Source of the DNA: Asterias rubens
Taxonomy: Eukaryota
Direction of reading: 5' to 3'
DNA length: 64,000 nucleotides
Assembly (NCBI RefSeq): GCF_902459465.1
Contig: NC_047080.1
Location: 5,766,001 to 5,830,000 of the forward strand
Shown: positions 30,075 through 56,300 of the stretch, one piece after another
Layout: every line of letters starts with the position of its first letter
Position numbering within the stretch: position 1 is the stretch's first letter
Program-made: the position numbers and the translations under genes
Notes under the pieces: model-generated
Told to the model about the DNA's origin: nothing
What the model saw: the letters and a program-made list of their open reading frames with translations, nothing else
Database searches by the model: none

Positions 30075-30409
30075 AGTTTGCAAATCACAGGTAAGTATTG
30101 GAGAATTCAGGCATTGAACTAGCCTTTTCTCAAGGCCTTTGTGGCTAAGACAAAAGCTGTGTAGCTACAAAGCATTGGGAAAGGGAGACCACATGCACCA
30201 GTGGAAAAACCACAAGGCATTTCCTAACTTAATTTTGAATTGTTGTTGTTGAGTTATTCATAAAGATTCAAACATAAATTGTTCACCCCAATTACAATGC
30301 TTGATAGGGTAATGTATGCGGACCACATTGCTGTTGTTGCCCTTGTATAGTTGTGAAATCAGAGTAAATGTATAAAGGTACTGACAGTTATGGCTGTGGA
30401 AGTGTTGTG

Positions 30410-30790
30410 GCTGAGCATCGAATTCAAACTCCGGTGTATCTGATCAACAGAGTGTGGGTTTGAATCCCCAGCTGTGACACTTGTGTCCTTAAAGCAAGAC
30501 ACATAACCATTGCTTCATCCTTCAGATGGGACGTAAAGCTGTTGGTCCCATGTGTTGTGTACACATGTAAAAGAACCCAGTACATTTATTGAAAAGAGAA
30601 GGGGTTTCGCCTTGGCGTTCCTGGCTGTGGCTGCCTCTATGCGCCTGAGCACCTTGTAAACCCTTATAAGGTGCTACATAATTGGTTCTCAGAATTCAAT
30701 AACCTATCTTTCTGAAAGTTTGTATATACTCAGCGCCTTGAGTACCTTGTTTGGCAGATACATGCGCTATATAAGACTTCAATATAATTA
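30410..30790 (+). mobile_element. tRNA-headed SINE with Deu/Nin-like core and L2-like tail (family D1)
   Basis: B box gtgggtttgaatcccc; core ggacgtaaagc..gttggtccc...taaaagaacccag...gaaaagagaagggg...ctgg; tail agcgccttgag...gcgctatataag followed by an AT-rich end. Reverse copies at ~6288-6700, 10470-10870, 54545-54935 and 58720-59015. Confidence 0.8.
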
Positions 30791-31857
30791 TGGCCACCAT
30801 GGTCTGGACTTCTTGGTAATGTAACAAGTGATTGAATTGTTTTTTGTTTAACAGTACCAGTTGAAGACAGGTTCCATGTGTTTCTTGAGAGGGTTTCAGT
30901 TGAAGCATGGATTGTTTACAGCAACATCTATTTGTCTAATGGCTGCTAGTCCGGCATTAGTGTATCTAGTCATCCAGAGAAACCCATCTAATGCAGCTAG
31001 TATCATCTCAATTGGAGCTTGTATTCTCCTGGAAATGATCTTCTTAAAGTAAGTGGAAGCAATACAGAAAGGTTTGTGGTAACACCATGAAATGACTATC
31101 TCTAATGAGTTGGGGTGGTTCTGAAAAGAACCGTTGGTTTCAACTCCTGCTAAGTGGAAGCAGTTTCAATCTTGGTTTTACCCATATACATTATACAGTT
31201 GTTGCACGCTGTGACAGGGTCCCTGGCGTTTTGTACACCCGAGGGGGCAAATGGCACCTGAGACGAAGCCAAGGGTGCCATTTGCAACCGAGGGCGTGCA
31301 AACCCATGCACCCCAATCACAGCGTGCAACAATTGTTTTGTTATACCTTGGTAACATTAGTATTCCTCTTCTCGAAGTTCTGTTATTATCTTCAAACATT
31401 GTTACGACGAAGTATTCATTGTTAAATAAGCAGACGAACAAGAAACAATTCCTCACTGTTCCCTCGAACCCGCCGGTGGTTCGTACCCAGCGCTGGAAAT
31501 CGACCAACGCTGGGAACGATCAAGGTGATGTACACCGGTGTACATAACTTTTTATGTTACCCGATCCCCGAGCCATGTAACATGCGTTTTTGTTGCACGT
31601 CACCGTGATTGGTTATCGACCAACTAAACTTCACAGTTTGTTATCGAGGTATAACAATATTTCTTGTTTGTTATTTCAGGGATGAGAAACCTTAGTTTTG
31701 ATCTGAATTTAGACCTTTTTATATCTACATGTTGAAGAAAGTAGCTGTTATTTTACTTTAGATATGGAATCTTGCGGTTTATGCTACTCTAGTGCTGAGG
31801 TTACTGTAATCTAGAAATCCATACGGATGGAAAACTTATCTGATCCAAGTGGACATT

Positions 31858-31950
31858 CAGAACTCAGTGTAAAGAACTCAGTGTACAGAACTCAGTGTAT
31901 AGAACTTGGTGTATAAGACTCGGTGAACAAGACTCAGTGAGCAAAACTCG
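31858..31950. repeat. 14-bp degenerate tandem repeat (agaactcagtgta-like), intronic; shorter mirror copy at ~53665-53725
   Basis: About 6-7 consecutive units of agaactcagtgt(a/g). Confidence 0.8.
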
Positions 31951-32431
31951 TAAACATACCAAGTCCAAACCAACTAATTTTTTCATACAAAAGTATTTTA
32001 ACATGTTATGATTTGCTGTTTTAGGTATCTTGGGATCAGCTGTTGCAATGCCTACAACAGAGCCAAAATATCATCGTTTCGGATCATGGGTTCTTTGGTC
32101 AACAATGGGCCTGTAACCATGGCAACTGTGTCTATGGACAGTAGCATCCCTTCTCAACCTCTTCCAGTGACATCTTCAGAGTCAGCAACCATGACGGTGG
32201 AACCCAAGATGGAACCAAGTGTCTCTGTTGTTTCTGTATCAGTAATATCAACGGAAACAACAGACGGCATAATGATTCATTCTAATACAATATAATTGTT
32301 TGTACTTAGTATACTATTTGTTAGGGAAAGGGTTGGATGGGATTGAGTTTCGCGTTGATCTTGGGTATACAACTTTGTAGAACTTTTTGGTTTGTGTCAC
32401 TTTACACACAAAAAACACCAGGTTACTTGAT

Positions 32432-32790
32432 TTAAAGGCACTTGACACTATTGGTAATTACTCAAAGTAATTGTTAGCATAAAAACTTACTTTGTAACAA
32501 GCATTGGAAAGCTGTGAGAAACGGCTACCTCTGAAGTACGTAGTTTTCGAGAAAGATGTAATTTTCCACTAAAATATTTGAACTTGATTTTGAGGTTCCT
32601 GAAATCAAGCATCTGAAAGCACACAACTTCCTGTGACAAGGGTGTTTTTTTTTCTTCCATTATTATCTTTCAACTTCCATGACCAATTGAGCTCAAATTT
32701 TCACAGGTTTGTTATTTTATGCGTATGTTGGAATACACCAAGTGAGAAAACTGGTCTTTGACAATCACCAAAGGTTTCCAGTGTCTTTAA
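32432..32790. mobile_element. MITE family A copy (mirror copy at 52822-53175)
   Basis: ttaaaggcacttgacac ... ttccagtgtctttaa. Confidence 0.85.
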
Positions 32791-35212
32791 GTTGGATCAA
32801 AGAATATGTTGAGTCAAACAATTTGTTTTGTTGGTTGAAAGACAACGTGTGTTTCATTTCTACATGACATTGGCAGTGAGTTAGAAAATCATGAACAAAC
32901 CATGCATTAAATTTAGATTAATATTGTAATCATTGAAAAAAAAAAAGTACTATGATGTAAACATACTAACTCTGAATTGTTATCTTCTCTATTGCCAAAT
33001 AAAGAATTTTTTGTATATTAAAATAAATCATACAAAGATTATACCATTAAAAGGGTAAAACATATTTAAAACTGGATGAATGTTTATTAATTTGTTTATT
33101 AATTTGTCAGATAACATTTTGTTACATGTAGTTGGCAAATACTTAACAAGTGGATTTGTGTATATACATTTTGATAAATTTTTGAATATGACGGTATATT
33201 ATATAAAAGAAATGAACTTGTAAAGAGATTATTTTACAACCCTATAATTTTTGTATTGTGATTATGTATTCTCAAAGATAAACTTAAGAAGCATGTATTG
33301 GTTTAACTTTCTGTCTTAAAGGGTCTGGGTACCTTTTGCAGGAAACAAACACAATGTCCACAGACTTAAATCCAATTCACACAGTGTGAAGATAATGATA
33401 GTAGAAAGCTTCCCTTCAAATATTACTTGCTGAGGTGCTGTAGTTTTGGAGAAATGAGTAAAACAAGTCACGAAAACAGTTTTCGTCTCGGAGCTTACAA
33501 TTATTTTAGCATTTTAATTGTATTTTCATTGTTGTACATTTAGTACTCATTCCTCAAAAACTACAGCACCTCAGCAAGTAATGTTTTAAGGGAAGCTTTC
33601 TTTTATCATAATCTTCAAGTGTAGTAAGTTTAATATTAATCTGTAAACATTGTGTTTTATGTTACAACAAGTACCCAAATTGGACTCTTGTTTCCTTATT
33701 TTGTTTTCAGGTAACTGGATGTTAAGTTGTTGTTTATGTTGTTGGATTGAATTGTTTGAGAATGAGTTTATTTGTACATTGTGTGAAGCAAGTTGTGGTG
33801 ATTATGGAGTCAAAAGTTTACTGCCAAATAATGCAAAACCTTAGTTCTACAATGTAGTAGACTTCTTGGCCGGATAGATTATATAAAAGTTATATTTAAT
33901 ACAGGGTTATTAGGAGGAAAGAGGTCTCTCTGTTCCAAAGAGAGTTTTGTGTATCATTGCCAACATTGAGCTAGTTATTGTTTGTTTTATTGCTTAGCAA
34001 GTTTGTTACTTATTTTCAGAATAAATTAGCATATGTAAACTGCTTTCCCCAAAGAACAGTAAAAACGCTCAATAAACTCTCTTTCTGTATATATTATTAG
34101 CCTTTAGTTTTTTGTTTTATAGCACTCCAGTTGACAAGAATGAAGTGAGCTTTTTATATATAACGAAGAATGCACACATAATGCAATAATTGTCAATAAT
34201 GTTTACACACCTTTATTTACTTTCCGTCAAAATATTTACTGATAAAAATGTTATTTACAGATGATTGTTATTTAATTATGATTAATGTGATTTACAACCT
34301 CTAACTGACTGTTTTGAATAATGATTGAACCTGTTAAAGCTAATACAATTTATGTAAAAGATTATGTTAAGAAAAGAATAAAACTATTATTGGAAAAGTA
34401 AGAGTGATTAAGTTTTGTGATTTGTGTTGCCACAGAAAGCTGGAACAATTTTACCTCAATGCAGGATTTATTTTGTATAATAAATAACTCATGTAGGCAA
34501 TATAAAAATCGCCCCCAAAAAACAAGTATGTAGAAGAACAGAACCCAACACTGACAGTAGAGTTAGGACTCATTAAGCCTGGAAAAGGAAAACAACAGCA
34601 GCGCTTTAAAAAAAAGGGGGGGGGGGCTATTTTATTATGTTAGCAGAGAGGTTATTTAGGTTTCTCCTCAGTTACACCAAGATTTATCCTCGCAACCTTA
34701 ATATACTTGCACTGTTATTCCCTAAATATTAAACGCTGATGGAACATTTTGGTTTTCGTAATGTTTTTATGAAACAAATTCATGACCATGGGCTGACCCA
34801 TCTGCCAAAACGGCCCATCTCTGAAATTACTTTCATATTATAAAGATCAATATTTATTTTATTTTTTTTCAAAACAAAATTTCAAAGGCTTATTATCATG
34901 TATTGACGTGAAACATGTCCTATGACATGACAACCAAAATGTACATGGGGCTATTCGCAATTTATTAACATGAAAAAGGGCGAGTCTTTACAACTTTGCA
35001 AAACTGAAGAGTAAGTAACAAATTCCCTAATGACAGTAGGAAGATTGTTCCAAATCATTGGTATTTGCCCAGCTTCACTGAAAGGTTTTTACATCGTTTT
35101 GTTGGCACTAACAGAATATCCTTGACTTGCTTGTCTCAATAATAAATTGTTTTTGAGTTCGGTTCTGTTGTTTTTGCATGCGCTGCTAAAAGTTTTTGGG
35201 TGTTTTAGTAAA

Positions 35213-35228
35213 TAGCGCCACCTTGTGG
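35213..35228 (-). promoter_or_regulatory. CTCF-like motif (CCACAAGGTGGCGCTA); mirror copy at 50385-50400 (+)
   Basis: Close match to the CCASYAGRKGGCRSY consensus; it lies between the RING-CH gene 3' end and the candidate downstream promoter. Confidence 0.5.
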
Positions 35229-35831
35229 TGTGAAGTGTCTACCACTTTTTGTAGTTTCGCAAGCGCGGTTTTCGCTGGTTTCTGGGTGTAGTTGTAATTG
35301 AAATAGCATTACAGTAGCAGGATACCATGCGACCAGAACAATCCAGGAAGTAATCTGTGTTTACCGTGTGCTTGCTATTGACATTTTTCACACTCACAAC
35401 ACAGTTAGATTTTGTACACGTCGAGTGGTGTTCACGAACAAAATAGCTAACAATCAACATAACCAATTGTGAAACCGAAACTGCAAAAGCTGTTGAAGAC
35501 ATCAGAAGCGAAAGTCTATCCCTCATTAATCAGTTCAGTGTTAATGTTCACGTTCTATGTCGAAGAGTTTGTCTAATCTCTCGCCGTCAGCTGGTTACGA
35601 AGTGGGTCAATGAATTGCGCCGTGACGAGTGAAATTCTACACGGGTGAAAGTAGTCATTTATCCCGCCAGCCTGCTGTCGTCTGATTGTGGTAGATTTAG
35701 TCTCACGGTCGGTGTAACCATTGCTCTATGATGTAAACTTGGTGGTTCTAACTGAATTACATGGCTTAACATCATCGTGTTCGGAGCCAGTAGAGTGAGG
35801 AGATTTGATTGACATTTTCTATGTTAACAAA

Positions 35832-35877
35832 ATGTCTTCCCCAGTGAAGATGGTGATGAAGATGAAAGATGGAGCTG
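35832..35877 (+). CDS. Candidate first coding exon of an unidentified gene (MSSPVKMVMKMKDGA-G); mirror copy at 49739-49784 (-)
   Basis: ATG in an aaaATG context and a strong donor G|gtgagt, downstream of a CpG-richer region (35240-35800). Downstream exons could not be assigned confidently. Confidence 0.35.
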
Positions 35878-38800
35878 GTGAGTAAAAATACATATTATTT
35901 TTGTTATTGAATTGAAAATGAAATTTGATTAATCCGAATGTGACATAGAAACGGGTGGAAGAGAATCCTCCTTAACAACATTGCTTCAAATATAACAATA
36001 AGTAATTATGGTTGCTATTTTTTGGGTACAAAAATATTGTATGATTGTAGTTTGTAAGCAAATCCCAGCACTACATGGTAGGAATTAACCCTGAAATATG
36101 AATGATGCGTCAACATTGTCATGATTGTGGGTTCTCATTAAAGCCTGTTCTAGATGAGGAACGGTGTGCAGTACGTCCAGTAGTGGACACTAACAACTTT
36201 TGGGACCGCTGTATAGAGTTTGATTTTGATCAGTTTTGTTGAAAAATTGTAAAAAGATCGGATGAAAGAAGAAGATAAGATGCAAAGGTATGGTTTGGTT
36301 TGACCTCGTTGGTACTGGTTTCTTTACTTTAATCCAATTAAGCCAGCAAATCAAAGATGTGTGTATGACGTACATGAGTTGCTGACATACATTGCCAGAT
36401 GAGGGATGAAAGAATTTTGTTGTTGTTACCACATCCCACACTAGCCAGGATAGGAGGAAAAAACACACATAGTTTCTAATTTGAAATTTTTATGTTTACT
36501 CTCTCGTCATGCTTGTACCGTGGGAGTTACTCTTAGAACTACATGTATGAGGTTCGTCCACTATCGTCTCCACTAACGATAGCGGAGACGATAGCAGAAC
36601 GAATCTCATAGTTCTAGGAGTACATGGGACTTATCATCTTTCCTGGTATTAGTGGTCCGATTCCCTTCAAGTTCAATGTTGTTGTGGGTTGAGGAACTTT
36701 TTGGGGGATAACATTTCTAGGTAAGCTGTGCATGCTCAGTGCCATTCCAGCATTATTTGTTTACTAGAAAAATAATTCTGGTGCCTGCCAAACAGTTGAT
36801 GTACATGTACTGCAAACAAGTAGCGAGGCACACACATTTGTGCTGCAGTTGAGTTACTCTGCATTGATTAATATTGGTCAAGGCTCACCGCACTAAAGGA
36901 GGTCATGAATACTGATGGTAACCCAACAATTTCCTTTCAACAAGGAAGTTGAAATATTTCTGTAAGCTTTGTCAGATTGTCATGTTTAAAACCAGTTATA
37001 AACATAGGAAGATCTAGTCACTGTAGTACGGAGGATTGATATTGATGTGAGGTGTAGACTTTGTCACATTGTGCTGCAGATGAAGTAAGGTTGTAGGGTT
37101 CGGTAATTCGGTTGTAGTGTCAAGAAGGAGCAGCTGTTTCCAGCTTACTTCCCAATCAACTTTGAATTTGTTATTCCTGAGGTCTCATAATGAATGAAGG
37201 TGATGTACAAAGAACTGATGAAAAGGATTGCACAAAATGGAAATTTTTTAGAAGATATGATTAGTAAAGTCTACATTTAACATAATTTTTGTTCCAACTA
37301 CTGTTAGTGATACATAACTGTTGTAAATTGTAAAGGAAATGACTAGAAAAACATCATTGATGTTAATTACTGATTTCATTTCTTTGATCTACATTCTACA
37401 AGGATAGTTGCCCATGCCAGTAATAATCCAGTAATTTTTGGAAATGTTATCTGGCTGATGTTTTATTCCTCATGCGTTCACTTTGTGTCCAAATTCCAAA
37501 TGATAGAATTATCTCTGTTACAGCATGGAGGAATGGTTACCTAGGTGACTCTATCACTTCAGACAAGGTCTTTTTCATTGAGTTAAAACCTCAGTAGTAA
37601 AGGGCATGGCAATATGAATCAGAGTGTCTTTTCTGCTGTGCTTAAAGTTACTTGTTAAATCCATTGGTTTTGTGGCAGGAGTCTTGCTATGTTCAGAAAC
37701 ATGCAGGCATACTGTACATCATTCAGCACACAATTTGTAAAAAAATCTGTGATGTCTGTAACTTGATACATTGACACGGATACACTTCTTTTTTACATCC
37801 TGTATACTACAAACCATAGTACGTAAACACTACATAAAATTTGATGTGTGTTATTCAACGACTCCAGCTCAAGGTTTGAAATTTTTGTGACTAGTATTTC
37901 TTTACTGGACCAGAATAAGAACAGAATCTAGGCCTATTACACAATGTAAGAAAAGGAACTTTGTACAAAGTCTTAGTTTCAACTTTCACTAGGAGCAGAT
38001 CTGATATTTTGGTATGCTTTGATATTCAACCAAATTAAAATGAAAGTCTTTATCAGACTCAAACTCAAAGTCAACATTTATACATTTTTACTTCTTCAAG
38101 GATATTTACACAGTGAGGTACATGTACAGTGGGTCTATTTTTCCCCAATTAGATTTAGCACAACAAGACAATCAGACTCGCAGTTCAGTCTTGAGTTTAC
38201 TGCCCCGATGCTAAAATCACTGGTCCCAGGCCCATGGTTCAGTGTGTAAGCATATTAGATCTGTATCCTGTATCTTTCTAGTGTCCACGACACACTGCAG
38301 AATAATTAGAATTGTATCAGAGAGGTTAGAAGTCCATCCCTGTTGACACAGAGTAAAATGTGGGATAGATTCTAGATAGTTTCTAAGTTGGTTTGAATGA
38401 GGTCACTTATTCCCCAGGTAGAAGTATTTATGGAATGTGCAAGGTGATTTAGACTCTACGATCAATAGTCCAATCTTTCATTCTGCACCTATGTCCCTTT
38501 GATGTTCATATTTTGCAATTTGACCTTTGAATGACTTTTCTACATGTATGTTTAAAAGTGTTTGTTTCATCACATTTAATTTTTGTTTCATCATTTTTAA
38601 AACTATTGTTTACCGAGTCAGTAATTTCAAAGGTAAATCTGTAGGCCTATATTTTTGTGATTTTTTCCCCCCAAATTTACACAGTTTTAATAAGACCAAA
38701 ATAGATGGTTTGCACTACGCGTCATCAACCGCCATATTGGATGAAATAGGCACGCATGCATGGCTATCATTGGCTAAGACTAGAGTGTAGTCGTACAAAT

Positions 38801-41800
38801 GTATGCACCATTGCATCTTATCAAATAATGGCAGTTTATGACGCTTAGTGCCATCCATATATTGCCAAATAAATTTTAATTTTAAGGTAAAAAAAAGGAA
38901 GAAAATGAATGTATGTAGTTTTATTTGACGAAAAGATTTGATTGTTACATGCACACCTACTTTCCCACAAACTGTCGAAGATCGCACCTGCTATCAATTG
39001 ACAGTAATATATACACCCCCCTTTCAACTTTTTTTGTATAACCAATTGATTTGTTATCTTCCATTGTCACCTCTAGTCAGTCACTTTATGTTTGTGTGGT
39101 TTCATTGTTACTGTAGAATGTCTGTCACTAAAAACCCACAATAATTGACACTTTACAAAAAGAAACCCAGTTTGGTTCACTAACTACTGGTATTTACAGG
39201 ATGTGTATTGTAAAAAGAAAGTGAACAATTGACACGCTACACTCTCTTGTACAAAACAAACACCATCTAAAAACGGCATTAAAAGGATATATTCATTGTG
39301 AGAGACTTGACAGTTGAGTTGCCACATGTAATAAAAACAGGAAATATTGTGACAAATGTGATTTAGGAATAATGGCTTAATATACCATAGAGCAAGGTTT
39401 GCGCCATCCTCACAATAAAAGGTCAGACGATGTTCAATAGAAAAAACAGATCTGCACAAACTTCTAATAATGTGCAGGTTTTTATCTGGATTGTTGTGAA
39501 GCGCAACTTCCACAATTTCGTAGGGCCAATATGTACCTATTTTTCCAATTAAAAGTGCTGAATCTAAATTTAAATTGAACTGATCTTGGGTCAGTACTTT
39601 GCTGGATTATTTGTCCCATGTAATGTTTGTTTGTTTGAGCCCAATTTTATAGCACTGCTTAGCGGCCGATTTTGTGCTCACTGGTGCGATTTCCATTTCA
39701 TAGCGCTGCTAACCGTAGGCACATGATCAGGCATGCTAACCTCCGGTGCATATTGCACGAAAATACATGACATCACAAGGCAAATCCATGGTGAATGCGG
39801 AATATGGCCACCTAATTTGTCTGCTAACCTGTGAAATAGGTTTGAACCTAAGCAAATTTTTCTGCTACAGTACTCACAAAAATTTGCTTACCGTTAAGCA
39901 GCGCTATGAAATTTGGCCCAGGTCTGACTTTAGTAGTAGATTTAAATTTTAAAATACACGTTGCTAGTGAAAGTACTTTTGGCAAAAACCTGGCATGCAA
40001 CTTTAAATACTTCAAACCTTATATAAATGTGAGAAATCAAATTGTTAATAAATTGATTGATGATCTGTCAGATTACTGATGTAGTGGTTTACCCTAAAGT
40101 TTCACCACAGAGCACTAAATGGACCCGTGCAGACTCAAATAAAATGCTCTAACGTCATTTCCTTTCTGGATTAGTCTCACCCCAGGGTGTAAAAGTGTCA
40201 GGAATGGAGGATTTCTCCATGAGCTACATGGATAACATCTGAATCAAGACTATCGTTCATGGGTGATAACATTTACATCATCAAACGGTGATGCCTGTCC
40301 TGTTCCTAGTTGATATGTATAATGGTTGAGACTAGAAGAGCGGTCATGAATAATTCATGTACCATCCCTCAAACACTTGATACTGTTCTGCCATCCAACG
40401 CATGGTGACCCATTATGATTAATGGGTATTGATTAACACACAGTGATAGTGAAATGGTTTTACTGAAAGTAAACATAGAAAGATTCATTAGCAAAATAAG
40501 TACATTCGAAAATCAATAATAATGCTACCATTTAATCTAAAAGCATCTACGTATTGGGCAGGTTGAAACCAGGTCCCAATTTCATAGCGCTGCTGTAGCA
40601 GAAAAATTTGCTTAAGCCTGTAGCGTATTTCACAGGTTAGCAGAAAAATTGGGTGTTTACTGTGGATTTGCATTGTGACGTCATTTATTTTTGTGCGGTA
40701 AGCACTGCAAGGTTAGCGTGCCTTTTCGTGTGCTTACGGTTAGCAGCGCTATGAAATAGAAATCGCACAGTAAGCAAAAAATCGGCCGCTAAGCAGTGCT
40801 ATTAAATTGGGCCCAGTCTACTGTAGCCACAATCCACCAATAGAGAGATTTAGTGCACACATGTATACGTACAATGTACCAGAATAATTTACATGTTTTA
40901 GTGCCACATTAAAGGATTCGGGCACTTTTTCAAAATGTTCACAGATTTACATTAAACTTACATGGTTTGAAGAAAATGATAGTAGAAAGCTGCCCGGCAA
41001 ATAATACTTTCTGCATGAGGTGCTGTAGTTTTGAGAAATGAGTAAAATAAGTCACAAAGTTTTTAAATAATTTTTTACATGCTGAAATGGAGACAAAAGT
41101 TATTTTCTCATTTCTCAAAAACTACGGCACCTCAATAAGTAATATTTTAAGGGAAGCTTGCTACTATCATTATCTTCAAACTGTGTAAGTTTAATGTAAA
41201 TCTGTGGACATTGTGTCTTGTTTTAGAAAAAAAATACATAGACCCTATAAGTAGGAACATGGTAGGTGTTACTGTTTTCACTCTCAGATGTCTCAGTCTT
41301 TTCTTGGTGCATCTTTGACTAAATGTAGACTAAAATGAAAATTTCAGACCTGCAATTGTTTGCACAGAGGGAATAATTTTTTGAAGTGTTACAAAAGTAT
41401 ACAAACTGTTTCTTTGTTTGTCCTGATGTTTTCTTTCTTCTTCAAATAACACCAAAATGGTTCTGGATTGTTTTACTTACATGTAGTTCACATGTACAAA
41501 TGTATGCAATGCACCATGCATGGACAGTGACCAAACAATTGTGGTTTGTTTTATTTTACATGCAGTTCACATATGATTGTATAAAAGGTTTCCATTTTAA
41601 CTGCTGAGACTAATCAATAACAAACAACACTGCATCTACTTGTACGGTGTACATGACAAGTGTCAGATACTGTACGGAGAATGATGACAAGAATTTGATA
41701 AACAGATTTACTCTTCTTTGCGCATGCACTGCTGATAAGATAAATAGTTGTTGAAGAAACCATCAGACTTGTCCAAGCTGAAGTTCAATGATTGATCGAA

Positions 41801-42416
41801 GGACGTAATTCAAGCCTTTTATTGAGGTACATGTGAAGCCAACATTCGATCTTTCTTGGATTCTTTGAGGAACTCTCGTCAAGAAAGGAGTGAGTCACTC
41901 CCTGATACTTGAGACATGAAACCAATGTGACTGAGATTAGTTGAAGACGCTACCATAAATAAACTGAACCCTTGGCAATGTGTGTAATACTAGACGGTGA
42001 TTACTCCAAAAAACCCATCCACTTGTTCTTCCTTGAAGGGTCTATAAGATTGCCATGGTGATGCAGCTCAATATTCAATCCCGGTGGCATCTTGCCTTCA
42101 GTTGAAGGCTCGAGTTGCACAACATCTTGTAGACTGATAAAGAAATAGAGCATTCAGATTTCTAGTTGGCAAACTTTTATGATCTGAGCAAAGTCACTCG
42201 TCATCTAGACAATTTGTTGTTGGTATCCTAATGCATTATGCCTGTGAGCAATGAGAGGAGGTTGACGCTCAAGCGCTACCTACCCAGTCAGCACAAATGT
42301 ATGTCATTTTGGTGTTCAGATACAAACATTAATCTTAAAAACACTGGACACTATCTCCATTGCTTGTTACCAAGTAAATTGTTGTGCTAATTAGTTATTA
42401 TGAGTAATTACCAATA

Positions 42417-42583
42417 CCGTGTGTCTCAAAAAAATCTATACACTTTTGAAATGGCTGCCGAATGAAAAGAATATGATTCTGGGGGAAAAGGCTTAGGTGT
42501 ATGGATAGCTTATGGACTCAGAATCGTTTATTTTTTATTCGGAAGCCATTTAAAAAGTGTATAGGTTTTTTTGAGACACCCGG
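42417..42583. mobile_element. Tc1/mariner-type MITE nested in a family A terminus (mirror copy at ~43075-43240)
   Basis: TA-CCG(T/G)GTGTCTCAAAAAA...TTTTTTGAGACACCCGG-TA interrupts accaa[TA]gtgtccagtg. Confidence 0.8.
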
Positions 42584-45900: not shown

Positions 45901-48900
45901 CACCGGAGGGTAGCATTGCCTGATCATGTGCCTACGGTTAGCAGCGCTATGAAATGGAAATCGCACCAGTGAGCACAAACTCGGCCGCTAAGCAGTGCTA
46001 TAAAATTGGGCTCAACAAACAAACATTACATGGGACAAATAATCCAGCAAAGTACTGACCCAAGATCAGTTCAATTTAAATTTAGATTCAGCACTTTTAA
46101 TGGAAAAATAGGTACATATTGGCCCTACGAAATTGGTGGAAGTTGCGCTTCACAACAATCCAGATAAAAACCTGCACATATAGAAGTTTGTGCAGATCTG
46201 TTTTTTCTATTGAACAGTCGTCTGACCTTTTATTGTGAGGATGGCGCAAACCTTGCTCTATGGTATATTAAGCCATTATTCCTAAATCACATTTGTCACA
46301 ATATTTCGGTTTTTATTACATGTGGCAACTCAACTGTCAAGTCTCTCACAATGAATATATCCGTTTAATGCCGTTTTTAGATGGTGTTTGTTTTGTACAA
46401 GAGAGTGTAGCGTGTCAATGTTCACTTTCTTTTTACAATACACATCCTGTAAATACCAGTAGTTAGTGAACCAAACTGGGTTTCTTTTTGTAAAGTGTCA
46501 ATTATTGTGGGTTTTTAGTGACAGACATTCTACAGTAACAATGAAACCACACAAACATAAAGTGACTGACTAGAGGTGACAATGGAAGATAACAAATCAA
46601 TTGGTTATACAAAAAAAGTTGAAAGGGGGGTGTATATATTACTGTCAATTGATAGCAGGTGCGATCTTCGACAGTTTGTGGGAAAGTAGGTGTGCATGTA
46701 ACAATCAAATCTTTTCGTCAAATAAAACTACATACATTCATTTCTTCCTTTTTTTTACCTTAAAATTAAAATTTATTGGCAATATATGGATGGCACTAAG
46801 CGTCATAAACTGCCATTATTTGATAAGATGCAATGGTGCATACATTTGTACGACTACACTCTAGTCTTAGCCAATGATAGCCATGCATGCGTGCCTATTT
46901 CATCCAATATGGCGGTTGATGACGCGTAGTGCAAAACCATCTATTTTGGTCTTATTAAAACTGTGTAATTGGGGGGAAAAAATCACAAAAATATAGGCCT
47001 ACAGATTTACCTTTGAAATTACTGACTCGGTAAACAATAGTTTTAAAATGATTGAAACAAAAATTAAATGTGATGAAACAAACACTTTTAAACATACATG
47101 TAGAAAAGTCATTCAAAGGTCAAATTGCAAAATATGAACATCAAAGGGACATAGGTGCAGAATGAAAGATTGGACTATTGATCGTAGAGTCTAAATCACC
47201 TTGCACATTCCATAAATACTTCTACCTGGGGAATAAGTGACCTCATTCAAACCAACTTAGAAACTATCTAGAATCTATCCCACATTTTACTCTGTGTCAA
47301 CAGGGATGGACTTCTAACCTCTCTGATACAATTCTAATTATTCTGCAGTGTGTCGTGGACACTAGAAAGATACAGGATACAGATCTAATATGCTTACACA
47401 CTGAACCATGGGCCTGGGACCAGTGATTTTAGCATCGGGGCAGTAAACTCAGACTGAACTGCGAGTCTGATTGTCTTGTTGTGCTAATCTAATTGGGGAA
47501 AAATAGACCCACTGTACATGTACCTCACTGTGTAAATATCCTTGAAGAAGTAAAAATGTATAAATGTTGACTTTGAGTTTGAGTCTGATAAAGACTTTCA
47601 TTTTAATTTGGTTGAATATCAAGCATACCAAAATATCAGATCTGCTCCTAGTGAAAGTTGAAACTAAGACTTTGTACAAAGTTCCTTTTCTTACATTGTG
47701 TAATAGGCCTAGATTCTGTTCTTATTCTGGTCCAGTAAAGAAATACTAGTCACAAAAATTTCAAACCTTGAGCTGGAGTCGTTGAATAACACACATCAAA
47801 TTTTATGTAGTGTTTACGTACTATGGTTTGTAGTATACAGGATGTAAAAAAGAAGTGTATCCGTGTCAATGTATCAAGTTACAGACATCACAGATTTTTT
47901 TACAAATTGTGTGCTGAATGATGTACAGTATGCCTGCATGTTTCTGAACATAGCAAGACTCCTGCCACAAAACCAATGGATTTAACAAGTAACTTTAAGC
48001 ACAGCAGAAAAGACACTCTGATTCATATTGCCATGCCCTTTACTACTGAGGTTTTAACTCAATGAAAAAGACCTTGTCTGAAGTGATAGAGTCACCTAGG
48101 TAACCATTCCTCCATGCTGTAACAGAGATAATTCTATCATTTGGAATTTGGACACAAAGTGAACGCATGAGGAATAAAACATCAGCCAGATAACATTTCC
48201 AAAAATTACTGGATTATTACTGGCATGGGCAACTATCCTTGTAGAATGTAGATCAAAGAAATGAAATCAGTAATTAACATCAATGATGTTTTTCTAGTCA
48301 TTTCCTTTACAATTTACAACAGTTATGTATCACTAACAGTAGTTGGAACAAAACTTATGTTAAATGTAGACTTTACTAATCATATCTTCTAAAAAAATGT
48401 CCTTTTCATCAGTTCTTTGTACATCACCTTCATTCATTATGAGACCTCAGGAATAACAAATTCAAAGTTGATTGGGAAGTAAGCTGGAAACAGCTGCTCC
48501 TTCTTGACACTACAACCGAACCCTACAACCTTACTTCATCAGCAGCACAATTTGACAAAGTCTACACCTCACATCAATATCAATCCTCCGTACTACAGTG
48601 ACTAGATCTTCCTATGTTTATAACTGGTTTTAAACATGACAATCTGACAAAGCTTACAGAAATATTTCAACTTCCTTGTTGAAAGGAAATTGTTGGGTTA
48701 CCATCAGTATTCATGACCTCCTTTAGTGCGGTGAGCCTTGACAAATATTAATCAATGCAGAGTAACTCAACTGCAGCACAAATGTGTGTGCCTCGCTACT
48801 TGTTTGCAGTACATGTACATCAACTGTTTGGCAGGCACCAGAATTATTTTTCTAGTAAACAAATAGTGCTGGAATGGCACTGAGCATGCACAGCTTACTA

Positions 48901-51900
48901 GAAATGTTATCCCCAAAAAAGTTCCTCAACCCACAACAACATTGAACTTGAAGGGAATCGGACCACTAATACCAGGAAAGATGATAAGTCCCATGTACTC
49001 CTAGAACTATGAGATTCGTTCTGCTATCGTCTCCGCTATCGTTAGTGGAGACGATAGTGGACGAACCTCATACATGTAGTTCTAAGAGTAACTCCCACGG
49101 TACAAGCATGACGAGAGAGTAAACATAAAAATTTCAAATTAGAAACTATGTGTGTTTTTTCCTCCTATCCTGGCTAGTGTGGGATGTGGTAACAACAAAA
49201 TTCTTTCATCCCTCATCTGGCAATGTATGTCAGCAACTCGTGTACGTCATACACACATCTTTGATTTGCTGGCTTAATTGGATTAAAGTAAAGAAACCAG
49301 TACCAACGAGGTCAAACCAAACCATACCTTTGCATCTTATCTTCTTCTTTCATCCGATCTTTTTACAATTTTTCAACAAAACTGATCAAAATCAAACTCT
49401 ATACAGCGGTCCCAAAAGTTGTTAGTGTCCACTACTGGACGTACTGCACACCGTTCCTCATCTAGAACAGGCTTTAAATGAGAACCCACAATCATGACAA
49501 TGTTGACGCATCATTCATATTTCAGGGTTAATTCCTACCATGTAGTGCTGGGATTTGCTTACAAACTACAATCATACAATATTTTTGTACCCAAAAAATA
49601 GCAACCATAATTACTTATTGTTATATTTGAAGCAATGTTGTTAAGGAGGATTCTCTTCCACCCGTTTCTATGTCACATTCGGATTAATCAAATTTCATTT
49701 TCAATTCAATAACAAAAATAATATGTATTTTTACTCACCAGCTCCATCTTTCATCTTCATCACCATCTTCACTGGGGAAGACATTTTGTTAACATAGAAA
49801 ATGTCAATCAAATCTCCTCACTCTACTGGCTCCGAACACGATGATGTTAAGCCATGTAATTCAGTTAGAACCACCAAGTTTACATCATAGAGCAATGGTT
49901 ACACCGACCGTGAGACTAAATCTACCACAATCAGACGACAGCAGGCTGGCGGGATAAATGACTACTTTCACCCGTGTAGAATTTCACTCGTCACGGCGCA
50001 ATTCATTGACCCACTTCGTAACCAGCTGACGGCAAGAGATTAGACAAACTCTTCGACATAGAACGTGAACATTAACACTGAACTGATTAATGAGGGATAG
50101 ACTTTCGCTTCTGATGTCTTCAACAGCTTTTGCAGTTTCGGTTTCACAATTGGTTATGTTGATTGTTAGCTATTTTGTTCGTGAACACCACTCGTGTACA
50201 AAATCTAACTGTGTTGTGAGTGTGAAAAATGTCAATAGCAAGCACACGGTAAACACAGATTACTTCCTGGATTGTTCTGGTCGCATGGTATCCTGCTACT
50301 GTAATGCTATTTCAATTACAACTACACTCAGAAACCAGCGAAAACCGCGCTTGCGAAACTACAAAAAGTGGTAGATACTTCACACCACAAGGTGGCGCTA
50401 TTTACTAAAACACCCAAAAACTTTTAGCAGCGCATGCAAAACAACAGAACCGAACTCAAAAACAATTTATTATTGAGACAAGCAAGTCAAGGATATTCTG
50501 TTAGTGCCAACAAAACGATGTAAAAACCTTTCAGTGAAGCTGGGCAAATACCAATGATTTGGAACAATCTTCCTACTGTCATTAGGGAATTTGTTACTTA
50601 CTCTTCAGTTTTGCAAAGTTGTAAAGACTCGCCCTTTTTCATGTTAATAAATTGCGAATAGCCCCATGTACATTTTGGTTGTCATGTCATAGGACATGTT
50701 TCACGTCAATACATGATAATAAGCCTTTGAAATTTTGTTTTGAAAAAAATAAAATAAATATTGATCTTTATAATAAGAAAGTAATTTCAGAGATGGGCCG
50801 TTTTGGCAGATGGGTCAGCCCATGGTCATGAATTTGTTTCATAAAAACATTCCGAAAACCAAAATGTTCCATCAGCGTTTATTATTTAGGGAATAACAGT
50901 GCAAGTATATTAAGGTTGCGAGGATAAATCTTGGTGTAACTGAGGAGAAACCTAAATAACCTCTCTGCTAACATAATAAAATACCCCCCCCCCTTTTTTT
51001 TAAAGCGCTGCTGTTGTTTTCCTTTTCCAGGCTTAATGAGTCCTAACTCTACTGTCAGTGTTGGGTTCTGTTCTTCTACATACTTGTTTTTTGGGGGGCG
51101 ATTTTTATATTGCCTACATGAGTTATTTATTATACAAAATAAATCCTGCATTAAGGTAAAATTGTTCCAGCTTTCTGTGGCAACACAAATCACAAAACTT
51201 AATCACTCTTACTTTTCCAATAATAGTTTTATTCTTTTCTTAACATAATCTTTTACATAAATTTTATTAGCTTTAACAGGTTCAATCATTATTCAAAACA
51301 GTCAGTTAGAGGTTGTAAATCACATTAATCATAATTAAATAACAATCATCTGTAAATAACATTTTTATAAGTAAATATTTTGACGGAAAGTAAATAAAGG
51401 TGTGTAAACATTATTGACAATTATTGCATTATGTGTGCATTCTTCGTTATATATAAAAAGCTCACTTCATTCATGTCAACTGGAGTGCTATAAAACAAAA
51501 AACTAAAGGCTAATAATATATACAGAAAGAAAGTTTATTGAGTGTTTTTACTGTTCTTTGGGGCAAGCAGTTTACATATGCTAATTTATTCTGAAAATAA
51601 GTAACAAACTTGCTAAGCAATAAAACAAACAATAACTAGCTCAATGTTGGCAATGATACACAAAACTCTCTTTGGAACAGAGAGACCTCTTTCCTCCTAA
51701 TAACCCTGTATTAAATGAAACTTTTATATAATCTATCCGGCCAAGAAGTCTACTACATTGTACAACTAAGGTTTTGCATTATTTGGCAGTAAACTTTTGA
51801 CTCCATAATCACCACAACTTGCTTCACACAATGTACAAATAAACTCATTCTCAAACCATTCAATCCAACAACATAAACAACAACTTAACATCCAGTTACC

Positions 51901-53312
51901 TGAAAACAAAATAAGGAAACAAGAGTCCGATTTGGGTACTTGTTGTAACATAAAACACAATGTTTACAGATTAATATTAAACTTACTACACTTGAAGATT
52001 ATGATAAAAGAAAGCTTCCCTTAAAACATTACTTGCTGAGGTGCTGTAGTTTTTGAGGAATGAGTACTAAATGTACAACAATGAAAATACAATTAAAATG
52101 CTAAAATAATTGTAGGCTCCGAGACGAAAACCATTTTCGTGACTTGTTTTACTCATTTCTCAAAATCTACAGCACCCAAGCAAGTAATATTTGAAGGGAA
52201 GCTTTCTACTATCATTATCTTCAAACTGTGTGAATTTGATTTAAGTCTGTGGACATTGTGTTTGTTTCCTGCAAAAGGTACCCAGACCCTTTAAGACAGA
52301 AAGTTAAACCAATACATGCTTCTTAAGTTTATCTTTGAGAATACATAATCACAATACAAAAATTATAGAGTTGTAAAATAATCTCTTTACAAGTTCATTT
52401 CTTTTATATAATATACCGTCATATTCAAAAATTTATCAAAATGTTATACACAAATCCCCATTGTTAAGTATTTGCCAACTACATGTAACAAAATGTTATC
52501 TGACAAATTAATAAACAAATTAATAAACATTCATCCAGTTTTCAAAATTTTTACCCTTTTAATGGTATAATCTTTGTATGATTTATTTTAATGTACAAAA
52601 AATTCTTTATTTGGCAATAGAGAAGATAACAATTCAGAGTTAGTATGTTTACATCATAGTACTTTTTTTTTTCAATGATTACAATATTAATCTAAATTTA
52701 ATGCATGGTTTGTTCATGATTTTCTAATTCACTGCCAATGTCATGTAGAAATCAAACACACGTTGTCTTTCAACCAACAAAACAAATTGTTTGACTCAAC
52801 ATATTCTTTGATCCAACTTAAAGACACTGGACACCTTTGGTGATTGTCAAAGACCAGTTTTCTCACTTGGTGTATTCCAACATACGCATAAAATAACAAA
52901 CCTGTGAAAATTTGAGCTCAATTGGTCATGGAAGTTGAAAGATAATAATGGAAGAAAAAAAAACACCCTTGTCACAGGAAGTTGTATGCTTTCAGATGCT
53001 TGATTTCAGGAACCTCAAAATCAAGTTCAAATATTTTAGTGGAAAATTACATCTTTCTCGAAAACTACGTACTTCAGAGGTAGCCGTTTCTCACAGCTTT
53101 CCAATGCTTGTTACCAAGTAAGTTTTTATGCTAACAATTACTTTGAGTAATTACCAATAGTGTCCAGTGCCTTTAAATCAAGTAACCTGGTGTTTTTTTT
53201 GTGTAAAGTGACACAAACCAAAAAGTTCTACAAAGTTGTATACCCAAGATCAACGCGAAACTCAATCCCATCCAACCCTTTCCCTAATAAATAGTATACT
53301 AAGTACAAACAA

Positions 53313-56300
53313 TTATATTGTATTAGAATGAATCATTATGCCGTCTGTTGTTTCCGTTGATATTACTGATACAGAAACAACAGAGACACTTGGTTCCATC
53401 TTGGGTTCCATCGTCATGGTTGCTGACTCTGAAGATGTCACTGGAAGAGGTTGAGAAGGGATGCTACTGTCCATAGATACAGTTGCCATGGTTACAGGCC
53501 CATTGTTGACCAAAGAACCCATGATCCGAAACGATGATATTTTGGCTCTGTTGTAGGCATTGCAACAGCTGATCCCAAGATACCTAAAACAGCAAATCAT
53601 AACATGTTAAAATAGTTTTGTATGAAAAAATTAGTTGGTTTGGACTTGGTATGTTTACGAGTTTTGTTCACTGAGTCTTGTTCACCGAGTCTTATACACT
53701 GAGTTCTGCACACTGAGTTTTGTGCACCAAAAATGCATGTTACATGGCTCGGGGGTCGGGTAACATAAAAAGTTATGTACACCCGTGTACATCACCTTGA
53801 TCGTTCCCAGCATCGGTCGATTTCCAGCGCTGTGACACACCGTACACAGTGTACGAACCACCGGCGGGTTCGAGGGAACAGTGAGGAATTGTTTCTTGTT
53901 CGACTGGTTATTAAACAATGAATACTCCGTAGTAATAATGTTTGCATATGACAACAGAACTCAAGAAGAGGAATAACAAATGTTACCAAGGTATAACAAA
54001 ACAATTGTTGCATGTTGTGACTGGGGTCCATGGGTTTGCACGCCCTCGGTGGCAAATGGCACCCTTGGCTTCGTCTCGGGTGCCATTTGCCCCCTCGGGT
54101 GTACAAAACGCCATGGACCCTGTCACAGCGTGCAACAATTGTATAATGTATATGGGTAAAACCAAGATTGAAACTGCTTCTACTTAGCAGGAGTTGAAAC
54201 CAACGGTTCTTTTCAGAACCACCCCAACTCATTAGAGATAGTCATTTCATGGTGTTACCACAAACCTTTCTGTTTTGCTTCCACTTACTTTAAGAAGATC
54301 ATTTCCAGGAGAATACAAGCTCCAATTGAGATGATACTAGCTGCATTAGATGGGTTTCTCTGGATGACTAGATACACTAATGCCGGACTAGCAGCCATTA
54401 GACAAATAGATGTTGCTGTAAACAATCCATGCTTCAACTGAAACCCTCTCAAGAAACACATGGAACCTGTCTTCAACTGGTACTGTTAAACAAAAACAAT
54501 TCAATCACTTGTTACATTACCAAGAAGTCCAGACCATGGTGGCCATAATTATATTGAAGTCTTATATAGCGCATGTATCTGCCAAACAAGGTACTCAAGG
54601 CGCTGAGTATATACAAACTTTCAGAAAGATAGGTTATTGAATTCTGAGAACCAATTATGTAGCACCTTATAAGGGTTTACAAGGTGCTCAGGCGCATAGA
54701 GGCAGCCACAGCCAGGAACGCCAAGGCGAAACCCCTTCTCTTTTCGATAAGTGTACTGGGTCCTTTTACATGCGTTACACAACACATGGGACCAACAGCT
54801 TTACGTCCCATCTGAAGGATGAAGCAATGGTTAGTGTCTTGCTTTAAGGACACAAGTGTCACAGCTGGGGATTCAAACCCACACTCTGTTGATCAGATAC
54901 ACCGGAGTTTGAATTCGATGCTCAGCCACAACACTTCCACAGCCATAACTGTCAGTACCTTTATACATTTACTCTGATTTCACAACTATACAAGGGCAAC
55001 AACAGCAATGAGGTCCGCGTACATTACCCTATCAAGCATTGTAATTGGGGTGAACAATTTATGTTTGAATCTTTATGAATAACTCAACAATAACAATTCA
55101 AAATTAAGTTAGAAAATGCCTTGTGGTTTTTCCACTGGTGCATGTGGTCTCCCTTTCCCAATGCTTTGTAGCTACACAGCTTTTGTCTTAGCCACAAAGG
55201 CCTTGAGAAAAGGCTAGTTCAATGCCTGAATTCTCCAATACTTACCTGTGATTTGCAAACTGTGCAATGTAAAGCTTCTGGATTATCGGCAGACTAAGGA
55301 GAAAACAAAATAGATGTTTTAGCTTTAAAGCCATTATACACTTTCAGGAAAAAAAAATAAAAAAGTTCACACATTTACAAATAACTTACAGGGTTTACAG
55401 AAGGTAATGGTAAAAGACTTCTCTTGAAATATTATTCCATGAAATGCTTTACTTTTTGAGAAAACATTAAAACAATTATCGATTCTCGATAGCGAGTATT
55501 ACGGATTTATTGTAAACACATGTCATGACACTGCGAAACATGCGGAAAAAGAGTGGGTTTTCCCGTTATTTTCTCCCGACTCCGATGACCGATTGAGCCT
55601 AAATTTTCACAGGTTTGTTAATTTATATATAAGTTGTGATACACGAAGTGTGGGACTTGGACAATACTGTTTACCGAAAGTGTATAATGGCTTTAAGGAT
55701 TTAGGTACTTTTAAAAATGTCCATAGATTTACAGTAAACTTACAGGGTTTGAAGATAATGATAGTGGAAAGCTTCCCTTTAAATATTACTTACTGAGGTG
55801 CTGTAGTTTTTGAGAAATGAGTAAAACAATGTCATGAAAATACGTTTGTAAATGCTTATCATTTTCGTCTCATGAGACGAAAATTATTTTCATGACATTG
55901 TTTTACTCATTTCCCCAAAACTACAGCACCTCAGCACGTAATATTTTCAGGGAAGCTTTCTACTATCATTATCTTCAAACTGTGTAAGTTTAGTGTAAAT
56001 CTGTGGACATTGTGTTTCAAAACCATGAATGAAAAGAAATGAAACAAAACAATGTATGAGACTATCTAATGATTTACAGTTTATACATTTATTACTTGTA
56101 AATCTACTTATCATATATGTTTGTTTAATTGTTAGTTTGTCTGTTTAGATGATCTTCCCGTCGAGGGAACTCTCCCCACAACTACAAGGGGATAAAGGGT
56201 CTATGTAACTTTTGTAGGTCAAAAAACACAATGTCCACAGACTTACACTAAACTTACACAGTTTGAAGATAATGATAGTAGAAAGCTTCCTTGAAAATAT

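What the first reader, a model, noticed from the sequence alone, without database searches (positions are those of the whole stretch)
30075..55261. 25-kb palindrome that starts exactly at a scaffold gap and duplicates the 3' end of the RING-CH gene
Seen: arms of ~12.5 kb with a 4-nt spacer. The left arm begins at the first base after the N-gap, in the middle of the CTVC exon. Sequence left of the gap does not continue the symmetry. Established: giant palindromes arise by fold-back or breakage-fusion-bridge events and are unstable, and contig-terminal inverted duplications are also a known long-read assembly artefact. My estimate favours an artefact joining two haplotypes, but a real inverted gene duplication is not excluded.
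Basis: partly seen in the sequence, partly recalled or inferred. Interest (0 to 1): 0.72.

Follow-up and report, generated by a model that had tools for sequence, protein, structure and literature searches.

The report
False fold-back duplication at contig end
The 25-kb palindrome is really written in this starfish assembly, but short-read data from four samples run past its centre into other sequence and no public run holds the centre's own words, so it is almost certainly an assembly artefact and not a gene duplication.

Summary
The left arm is 30075-42827, the spacer AATG is 42828-42831 and the right arm is 42832-55261. The left arm starts at the first base after the only N gap, 16 nt before the end of the CTVC exon.

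The interpretation as an artefact is supported and refined.
- The intact RING-CH gene lies on the minus strand and runs without a break from 58193 across 55262/55261 into the right arm. The left arm is therefore an orphan copy at a contig end.
- The axis sits in a natural 8-bp-stem, 4-nt-loop hairpin inside a 50-nt tandem unit.
- Short-read contigs of four runs (two from the probable source animal) follow the left arm to 42839, then diverge from the palindrome.
- None of 19 runs holds more than 2 of 5 sampled words of the junction stretch, and the missing three must be junction words.
- The inner 5 kb of the arms differs almost only by 1-bp indels, and the short-read contigs agree with the left arm. 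Both inner arms carry one haplotype where the animal is heterozygous. The outer 7.5 kb differs by 0.5-1.9% substitutions, as two haplotypes would.

Best reading (about 0.88): a palindromic fold-back long read bridged the contig end back on itself. Read depth and the long reads themselves could not be checked. This is not a real genomic feature, and interest is low.

The parts
29975..30074 (.). Scaffold gap of 100 N. It separates contig A (alpha-tubulin side) from contig B, which begins with the palindrome.
30075..42827 (+). Left arm (12,753 nt). This is the redundant, orphan copy. It begins mid-exon at the contig end. Its inner part, as far as it was laid (39884-42839), agrees gap-free with the X1 short-read contigs.
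30075..30090 (+). Last 16 nt of the CTVC exon, followed by a gtaagt donor. This truncated exon copy has no upstream half on contig A.
31593..31880 (+). A 288-nt segment present only in the left arm. Its first ~75 nt belong to a dispersed repeat family. It is an indel difference of the kind seen between haplotypes.
32008..32295 (+). Left-arm copy of the gene's last coding ORF. It has 2 nt and 1 aa (V/M) differences from the right-arm copy.
42764..42839 (+). One and a half copies of a natural 50-nt tandem unit (copies start at 42764 and 42814). Each carries the hairpin TTTCATTT-AATG-AAATGAAA (42770-42789 and 42820-42839). The second hairpin is the palindrome's axis.
42828..42831 (.). The 4-nt spacer AATG, which is the loop of the natural hairpin.
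42832..55261 (-). Right arm (12,430 nt). This is the copy in its natural context. On the minus strand it continues the RING-CH gene from 55262 onward without a break.
42840..47620 (.). Inner right arm, an error-rich stretch. It has 47 indels of 1-2 nt against the left arm and almost no true substitutions. At the sites that could be tested the short-read contigs side with the left arm.
53313..53600 (-). Last coding ORF of the RING-CH gene (C-terminal tail and stop codon).
55246..55298 (-). Complete CTVC exon (SADNPEALHCTVCKSQ) with its acceptor ...tccttag and donor gtaagt. It straddles the outer end of the right arm at 55261/55262.
57840..58193 (-). ORF holding the upstream RING-CH exon (CWIC...CQC...HHDC). 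It matches Pfam RINGv PF12906 at profile positions 1-38 of 47.

Best explanation
The palindrome is a false inverted duplication made during long-read assembly, not a structure of the starfish genome. The true locus, read on the minus strand, is: RING-CH gene 5' exons (58193 down to 55262), then the single-copy 12.4-kb segment R (the right arm), then a short array of 50-nt units that each contain an 8-bp hairpin, then sequence missing from the assembly. One long molecule or read folded back at the hairpin of the second unit. This may have been a snap-back and fill-in of a broken end, or a strand switch while the molecule was read (inferred). That read runs R, loop AATG, then the reverse complement of R. 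The assembler used it to carry the contig through the axis and back along R, so the contig ends with a second, inverted copy of R. This copy stops at an arbitrary point (30075, mid-exon), where a scaffold gap was later placed. Near the axis both arms come from one haplotype. Further out the two arms were built or polished from the animal's two haplotypes. The inner right arm kept its draft errors, probably because reads mapped to the better copy during polishing (inferred). Removing 30075-42831 and correcting the inner right arm from the left arm would give the likely true sequence up to the tandem array.
For: 1. Position. The left arm begins at the first base after the gap, 16 nt before an exon's end. 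Contig A has no matching exon half. The full exon and the rest of the gene are continuous with the right arm on the minus strand.

2. Axis. The spacer and the innermost 8 bp are a natural hairpin (DNA fold -5.4 kcal/mol for the other copy) that recurs 50 nt upstream as part of a repeated unit.

3. Reads diverge at the axis. In all four runs a 79-80-nt contig fits 42764/5-42839 with no difference, then has 4-5 letters that do not fit the palindrome. Its length equals one 50-nt period plus k-1 = 30, as expected for a tandem array that goes on. In X1, X3 and X18 the depth of bin 42830-43029 equals exactly these 10 letters (244.5, 18.2 and 25.4 times 10/200 = 12.2, 0.91 and 1.27), so nothing crosses the junction.

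4. Junction words are absent. For 42780-42880, 5 words were sampled. All 19 holding runs from 12 studies, including X1 and X2, hold exactly 2, and none holds more. The contig contains all 49 non-junction words, so the 3 missing words are junction words.

5. Copy number of the unit. Its contig has 2.4-2.9 times the depth of the entry contig in all four runs, against about 0.9 if the assembly were right. X1 and X2 do not differ from the independent samples.

6. Error pattern. The inner 5.2 kb has 47 indels of 1-2 nt and about 5 true substitutions. X1 contigs lie on the left arm with 0 gaps across sites where the arms differ.

7. One haplotype near the axis. X1 and X2 (one sample) differ from each other at 39993, 40069, 40083, 40084, 40154, 40507, 41339 and 41714, yet both arms carry the same allele at each.

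8. Outer arms. They differ by 1.9% and 0.5% substitutions plus 288-, 17-, 13- and 8-nt indels.

9. Missing sequence. The unit occurs nowhere else in the assembly, so the natural continuation is absent from it.

10. Background. Missed adapters, strand jumps and chimeras are described artefacts of PacBio CLR reads (PMC6304105). Figure 5 of PMC7794651 shows the Asterias rubens assembly being curated, and that paper's Figure 4 describes its set of 111 curated assemblies as built from PacBio CLR, 10X, Bionano and Hi-C data; it names false duplications as a main residual error.
Against: Only contigs were available, not raw reads. Contigs drop rare variants, so a weakly represented junction could be missed, and fragments that contain the centre of a perfect palindrome are under-represented in short-read libraries (general knowledge). 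Read depth across the arms against the flanks could not be measured. The long reads behind the assembly were not seen, so the fold-back read is inferred. X2 has extra depth near the axis (93 in the right bin and 27.6 in the left bin) that the listed pieces do not explain, although X2 lacks the junction words. That X1 and X2 come from the assembled animal is likely but not shown. The 4-5 diverging letters were not displayed, so their identity with the next repeat unit rests on the contig-length arithmetic.
Confidence: 0.88

Rival explanations
1. A real, heritable 25-kb palindrome exists in the sequenced animal, on one or both homologues. It would have formed in vivo by hairpin-primed fold-back at the minisatellite and would give a truncated inverted copy of the 3' end of the RING-CH gene.
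For: Short inverted repeats are the classical sites of in vivo fold-back (general knowledge), and the axis is such a site. The outer arms are distinct sequences. Assemblers also break at the edges of real repeats, so a gap at an arm's end is not decisive. Short reads are depleted at palindrome centres.
Against: No junction words occur in two deep runs of the probable source sample or in 17 other runs. Contigs of all four runs diverge at 42839. The depth ratio of the tandem unit in X1 and X2 equals that of the unrelated samples, where about 0.9 (homozygous) or about 1.5 (heterozygous) would be expected. The inner arms differ by indel errors only, with one arm wrong against the short reads. A step from 0 to 1.9% substitutions is not the pattern of an aged duplication. 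The left arm has no unique left flank.
Confidence: 0.06
2. The artefact arose without a palindromic read. Two haplotype contigs of the same locus were joined head-to-head by the assembler, scaffolder or curator.
For: The outer 7.5 kb of the arms differs as haplotypes would. PMC7794651 names false haplotypic duplications as a major residual error of such assemblies, and an unchecked first-reader note (s1-151114) flags another duplication across a gap in this genome.
Against: The join has no gap and only a 4-nt spacer that is the loop of a natural hairpin. A 20-nt hairpin is far too short to give a false inverted overlap. Both inner arms carry the same haplotype at eight sites where the sample is heterozygous, which a join of two haplotigs would not produce.
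Confidence: 0.05

Closest known systems
False duplications in long-read assemblies: haplotype retention and duplications at contig ends or gaps (discussed in PMC7794651)
   Same: The extra copy abuts a scaffold gap. The outer part differs from its partner at a heterozygosity-like level. It would make an annotator call a false partial gene copy.
   Different: The copy is inverted and joined to its partner without a gap, through a 4-nt loop. The inner 5 kb is the same haplotype rather than the other one.
Palindromic (inverted chimeric) long reads: PacBio missed-adapter or strand-jump reads (PMC6304105), and inverted chimeras after whole-genome amplification (PMC13265396; bioRxiv 10.1101/173872)
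   Same: The structure is R, a short loop, then the reverse complement of R. The second arm is of lower sequence quality. The structure is confined to a contig end.
   Different: No adapter remnant lies at the axis. The axis is a natural hairpin, which points to snap-back of a real end or a strand switch there rather than a simple missed adapter. No amplification step is known for this assembly. The read itself was not seen.
Genuine large palindromes: sex-chromosome ampliconic palindromes, and fold-back inversions of breakage-fusion-bridge cycles
   Same: Kilobase-scale arms, a very short spacer and an axis at a short inverted repeat.
   Different: The junction is unsupported by independent reads. 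One outer boundary is a gap. The arms differ by sequencing-type errors near the axis.

Membership tests
Assembly artefact: fold-back (palindromic-read) false inverted duplication | The extra copy lies at a contig end or gap and stops at an arbitrary point. | tested here: met
   The left arm starts at the first base after the 100-N gap, 16 nt before an exon's end. Contig A has no counterpart.
Assembly artefact: fold-back (palindromic-read) false inverted duplication | The junction sequence is absent from independent read sets, which continue into other sequence instead. | tested here: met
   Contigs of X1, X2, X3 and X18 diverge after 42839. No run holds more than 2 of 5 sampled words, and the 3 missing words must be junction words. 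This rests on contigs only, not raw reads.
Assembly artefact: fold-back (palindromic-read) false inverted duplication | Read depth shows one copy, not two. | tested here: inconclusive
   There were no raw reads and no flank in the laid stretch. The only indirect measure is the depth of the tandem unit, 2.4-2.9 times that of the entry contig in all four runs against about 0.9 expected from the assembly.
Assembly artefact: fold-back (palindromic-read) false inverted duplication | One or a few palindromic long reads underlie the join. | not testable with these tools
The reads are inferred from the shared haplotype of the inner arms and the error-rich inner right arm.
Haplotypic (uncollapsed) duplication | The two copies differ as the two alleles of the individual do, along their whole length. 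| tested here: not met
   This holds only for 30075-37574 (0.5-1.9% substitutions). In 37575-42827 both copies carry one allele at sites where X1 and X2 show heterozygosity.
Genuine genomic palindrome / inverted segmental duplication | The central junction is recoverable from independent reads of the same and of other individuals. | tested here: not met
Genuine genomic palindrome / inverted segmental duplication | Both outer boundaries are joined to unique flanking sequence. | tested here: not met
   The right boundary is continuous within an exon. The left boundary is a gap.
RING-CH (RINGv, MARCH-type) E3 ligase gene | A C4HC3 RING-variant domain. | tested here: met
   Pfam PF12906, E = 3.4e-14, profile positions 1-38 of 47, in the ORF 57840-58193 (-). 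The last C-x2-C (CTVC) is in the exon 55298-55246.

The most novel reading that the evidence does not exclude
The sequenced starfish really carries, in the germline on one homologue or as a mosaic, a very young 25-kb palindrome. It would have been made by hairpin-primed fold-back inside a 50-nt minisatellite, and its centre would be invisible to short-read libraries. The locus would then be a natural example of minisatellite-hairpin-triggered palindrome formation that copies part of an E3-ligase gene.
Probability: 0.06. Interest if true: 0.45.

Novelty: not a real feature. Interest (0 to 1): 0.08.

Why it matters
The value is practical. About 12.8 kb of this reference scaffold (30075-42831) is most likely a spurious inverted copy. 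It would be annotated as a truncated second RING-CH gene fragment, and it splits read mapping between the two arms. The true copy's inner 4.8 kb (42840 to about 47620) carries about 1% indel errors. The rest of the 50-nt array and whatever follows it are missing. Anyone using this locus for gene-family counts, structural-variant calls or regulatory maps should mask the left arm. The case also gives a compact recipe for recognising this kind of artefact from sequence alone. The signs are an arm ending at a gap, an axis at a native hairpin, and an indel-only inner zone that changes to a SNP-rich outer zone.

Tried and rejected
1. TRF on 42400-43260 found no array. Only 1.5 units per arm are in the assembly, so the tandem nature rests.

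2. Two scans of JGI metagenome contigs, one for the unit-to-unit junction and one for a unique 28-mer next to the axis, found nothing. The natural continuation past the array could therefore not be recovered.

3. A search of the whole assembly for the 30-nt unit found only the three copies at the axis. No haplotig or other contig shows the continuation.

4. Contig A's right end was checked for the missing exon half or for 50-nt units, and neither is there. Whether the reverse complement of contig A is the true neighbour beyond the array stays open.

5. The inverted match 27989-28311 against 56223-56553 (90%) was considered as a continuation of the symmetry. It was rejected because it belongs to a dispersed repeat with other copies at 33355-33661, 51953-52293 and 55692-56017.

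6. Depth-based copy number could not be done. Read laying returned contigs only, the stretch lay wholly inside the palindrome, and the single call was used.

7. The unexplained extra depth in X2 near the axis was considered as a possible junction contig. It was rejected because X2 holds no more junction-stretch words than any other run.

8. Literature searches for a paper describing contig-terminal inverted duplications as such gave only general statements on missed adapters, chimeric reads and palindromic reads.

9. Earlier notes were searched for other gap-adjacent palindromes in this genome, and none was found.
Full report
WHAT IS IN THE SEQUENCE

The window is G000:C20:5766001-5830000 of a 417.6-Mb assembly in 150 pieces. 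Earlier notes of this scan call it a starfish, Asterias rubens. I did not verify the name.

The window has one gap, 29975-30074, of 100 N. A self-comparison shows one very long inverted repeat over 30075-55261. Reading the centre gives these parts:
- left arm 30075-42827 (12,753 nt);
- spacer AATG 42828-42831;
- right arm 42832-55261 (12,430 nt).

The assembly contains no third copy.

WHICH ARM SITS IN ITS NATURAL CONTEXT

On the minus strand, the sequence across the outer end of the right arm reads ...ttctccttag TCTGCCGATAATCCAGAAGCTTTACATTGCACAGTTTGCAAATCACAG gtaagt.... This is a complete exon (SADNPEALHCTVCKSQ, 55298-55246) with acceptor and donor, and the arm boundary 55261/55262 lies inside it.

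Upstream on the same strand, the ORF 57840-58193 holds ...ECWICYD...PCQCKGDVAYVHHDCLKRWLME. It matches Pfam RINGv PF12906 at E = 3.4e-14 over profile positions 1-38 of 47. The CTVC exon supplies the last C-x2-C of that domain. Downstream ORFs at 54285-54476 and 53313-53600 lie inside the right arm.

So the intact gene runs on the minus strand from outside the palindrome into the right arm. The left arm begins with only the last 16 nt of that exon (AGTTTGCAAATCACAG gtaagt). Contig A, to the left of the gap, ends in unrelated sequence and carries the last exon of an alpha-tubulin gene on the plus strand at 23797-24804. The left arm is thus an orphan partial copy that stops at an arbitrary point which is also a contig end.

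THE AXIS

The innermost 8 bp of each arm plus the spacer form TTTCATTT-AATG-AAATGAAA. The same 20 nt occur 50 nt upstream (42770-42789) inside a repeated unit: GAATTATTTCATTTAATGAAATGAAA starts at both 42764 and 42814. As single-stranded DNA the upstream copy folds into the 8-bp, 4-nt-loop hairpin at -5.4 kcal/mol.

The fold-back point is therefore a native hairpin within a short tandem array, and the loop has the orientation of the native unit. A 3' end at such a hairpin can snap back and prime copying of its own strand. This is so whether it happens in a cell, in library preparation or at the sequencing polymerase. That step is inferred.

HOW THE ARMS DIFFER

There are three zones.
- 30075-34574: 80 substitutions in 4,206 aligned columns (1.9%), few 1-bp indels, and a 288-nt and a 17-nt indel.
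- 34575-37574: 0.5% substitutions and four indels of 3-13 nt.
- 37575-42827: 47 indels of 1-2 nt. Only about 5 isolated substitutions remain, because the other 12 'substitutions' are shifts next to indels.

Of the 44 one-base indels in the inner zone, 30 are bases missing from the right arm. Most lie in runs of 2-4 identical bases.

An indel-to-substitution ratio of about 10:1 is the spectrum of uncorrected long-read consensus, not of mutation. The outer zones have the spectrum of allelic variation. The 288-nt left-only segment begins with about 75 nt of a dispersed repeat.

WHAT INDEPENDENT READS SAY

Twenty runs from eight studies hold part of 39830-45829. I laid four of them:
- X1 and X2: one sample from 2019, the best holders and probably the assembled animal;
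- X3: a marine metagenome;
- X18: another labelled organism.

All are Logan contigs, so depth is per contig and rare variants may be lost. Five results bear on the question.

(a) The listed contigs lie on the left arm. X1's pieces (for example 40085-40592 and 41192-42184) fit with 0 gaps across sites where the arms differ by 1-bp indels. At those sites the left arm is correct and the right arm is wrong.

(b) X1 and X2 come from one sample, yet their contigs differ from each other at 39993, 40069, 40083, 40084, 40154, 40507, 41339 and 41714 (a 5-nt deletion). The animal is therefore heterozygous there. The two arms nevertheless carry the same allele at all of these sites, so the inner arms are two renderings of one haplotype.

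(c) In each run a 79-80-nt contig fits 42764/5-42839 without a difference and then has 4-5 more letters that do not fit the palindromic continuation. Eighty letters equal one 50-nt period plus k-1 = 30, which is the signature of a tandem array that continues. I infer this from the length, because the letters were not shown.

(d) In X1, X3 and X18 the depth of bin 42830-43029 (12.2, 0.91 and 1.27) is exactly the depth of that contig times 10/200. Nothing else lies within 190 nt to the right of the axis, and nothing crosses the junction. X2 has extra depth there that I cannot assign.

(e) The unit contig has 2.4, 2.9, 2.7 and 2.6 times the depth of the contig that enters it (42558-42793) in X1, X2, X3 and X18. 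The assembly, with 1.5 units per arm, predicts about 0.9. A palindrome on one homologue would predict about 1.5 in X1 and X2 only. The probable source animal looks like the unrelated samples.

THE JUNCTION WORDS

I then asked which runs hold 42780-42880. Five words were sampled. Nineteen runs from twelve studies hold exactly two of them, and none holds more, including X1, X2 and X18.

Of the 71 words in this stretch, 22 (starting at 42810-42831) exist only if AAATGAAA is followed by TAATTC, as in the palindrome. The other 49 lie inside 42764-42839 or are reverse complements of words that do. All 49 are therefore contained in the zero-difference contig that one search shows in X1, X2, X3 and X18. 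The three words that X1, X2 and X18 do not hold must therefore be junction words, and no listed run holds them either.

This also answers the open point about X2.

The 50-nt unit occurs nowhere else in the assembly. The sequence that the reads continue into is thus absent from the assembly.

MOST LIKELY HISTORY

These points are shown:
- the copy is terminal;
- the junction is unsupported;
- reads continue elsewhere;
- the inner arms are one haplotype;
- one inner arm carries draft-level errors.

These points are inferred. A palindromic long read with arms of about 4.8 kb or more, up to the change of pattern near 38000/47600, linked segment R to its own reverse complement. The assembler walked from the gene through R (other-haplotype reads in the outer part), through the fold-back read, and back along R, until the path ended at 30075. 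During polishing, reads preferred the better inner copy and left the inner right arm uncorrected. In the outer part, reads sorted by haplotype.

Missed adapters, polymerase strand jumps and chimeras are described artefacts of PacBio CLR reads (PMC6304105). Palindromic reads are also known after amplification (PMC13265396 and 10.1101/173872, listed). Figure 5 of PMC7794651 shows the Asterias rubens assembly before and after curation (75 breaks, 216 joins, one false duplication removed). That paper's Figure 4 describes its set of 111 curated assemblies as built from PacBio CLR, 10X, Bionano and Hi-C data, and it says curation works at a resolution of about 100 kb. A 12.8-kb error would easily escape at that resolution. 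That the A. rubens assembly itself rests on PacBio CLR reads is my inference from this set.

Whether the fold-back molecule formed in a cell or in the tube cannot be told from these data. In either case it is not a property of the germline genome.

WHAT REMAINS OPEN

- No raw reads were available, so there is no true depth profile and no count of molecules.
- Contigs can drop rare branches, and short-read libraries under-represent centres of perfect palindromes. A real but poorly sequenced junction is therefore not strictly excluded. I give a heritable palindrome 0.06.
- A head-to-head join of two haplotigs without a palindromic read (0.05) is contradicted by the shared haplotype of the inner arms and by the gapless 4-nt loop.
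- The sequence beyond the array is unknown. The scaffold order suggests that it leads towards the reverse complement of contig A, but this is untested.

COMPARISON WITH WHAT IS KNOWN, AND VERDICT

The structure resembles a genuine palindrome only in outline. It fails two defining tests of one: a junction recoverable from independent reads, and two anchored boundaries.

It matches the known class of false duplications at contig ends, in the inverted form produced by palindromic reads. The outer part also behaves like retained haplotype.

It is not a real feature and is of low scientific interest. It is useful as a correction to the reference: mask 30075-42831, distrust single-base indels in 42840 to about 47620, and expect missing sequence after the 50-nt array.

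Noticed in passing
window 42764-42839 (mirror 42820-42895): A 50-nt unit carrying an 8-bp, 4-nt-loop hairpin is tandemly repeated. Short-read contig depth suggests about 3-4 units in four samples, but the assembly holds only 1.5 units per arm. The unit occurs nowhere else in the assembly.
   Followed up: partly
window 40909-41250 (mirror about 44410-44750): A dispersed SINE-like repeat of about 340 nt has dozens of scored copies at 75-82% identity across many chromosomes. Most loci match in both orientations over positions 132-416 of the query, so the element has an internal inverted structure.
   Followed up: no
window 55692-56017 and 56224-56554; also 27989-28311, 33347-33661, 51953-52293: Copies of another dispersed repeat of about 330 nt. 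Two neighbouring copies just outside the right arm are inverted and 94% alike. A 90% copy on contig A mimics a continuation of the palindrome's symmetry.
   Followed up: partly
window 23797-24804 (+): A long open exon encodes the C-terminal 335 residues of an alpha-tubulin (ending ...EGEEY). If the false arm is removed, this gene lies tail-to-tail with the RING-CH gene.
   Followed up: no
window 57022-57862 (+ strand ORFs): Four near-identical short ORFs (MMNISYIPFTLTWLYHR...) mark the 7-unit intronic repeat next to the RING-CH exon that other notes of this scan describe (s1-150180, s1-150486).
   Followed up: no
window 31075-31600 (mirror 53720-54260): The highest local density of arm differences (26 substitutions in 500 nt, plus 17-nt and 288-nt indels) falls in a transposon-like stretch that also matches 4635-5041 at 80%. 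This may be a hypervariable repeat, or a place where the two copies are not strictly allelic.
   Followed up: no
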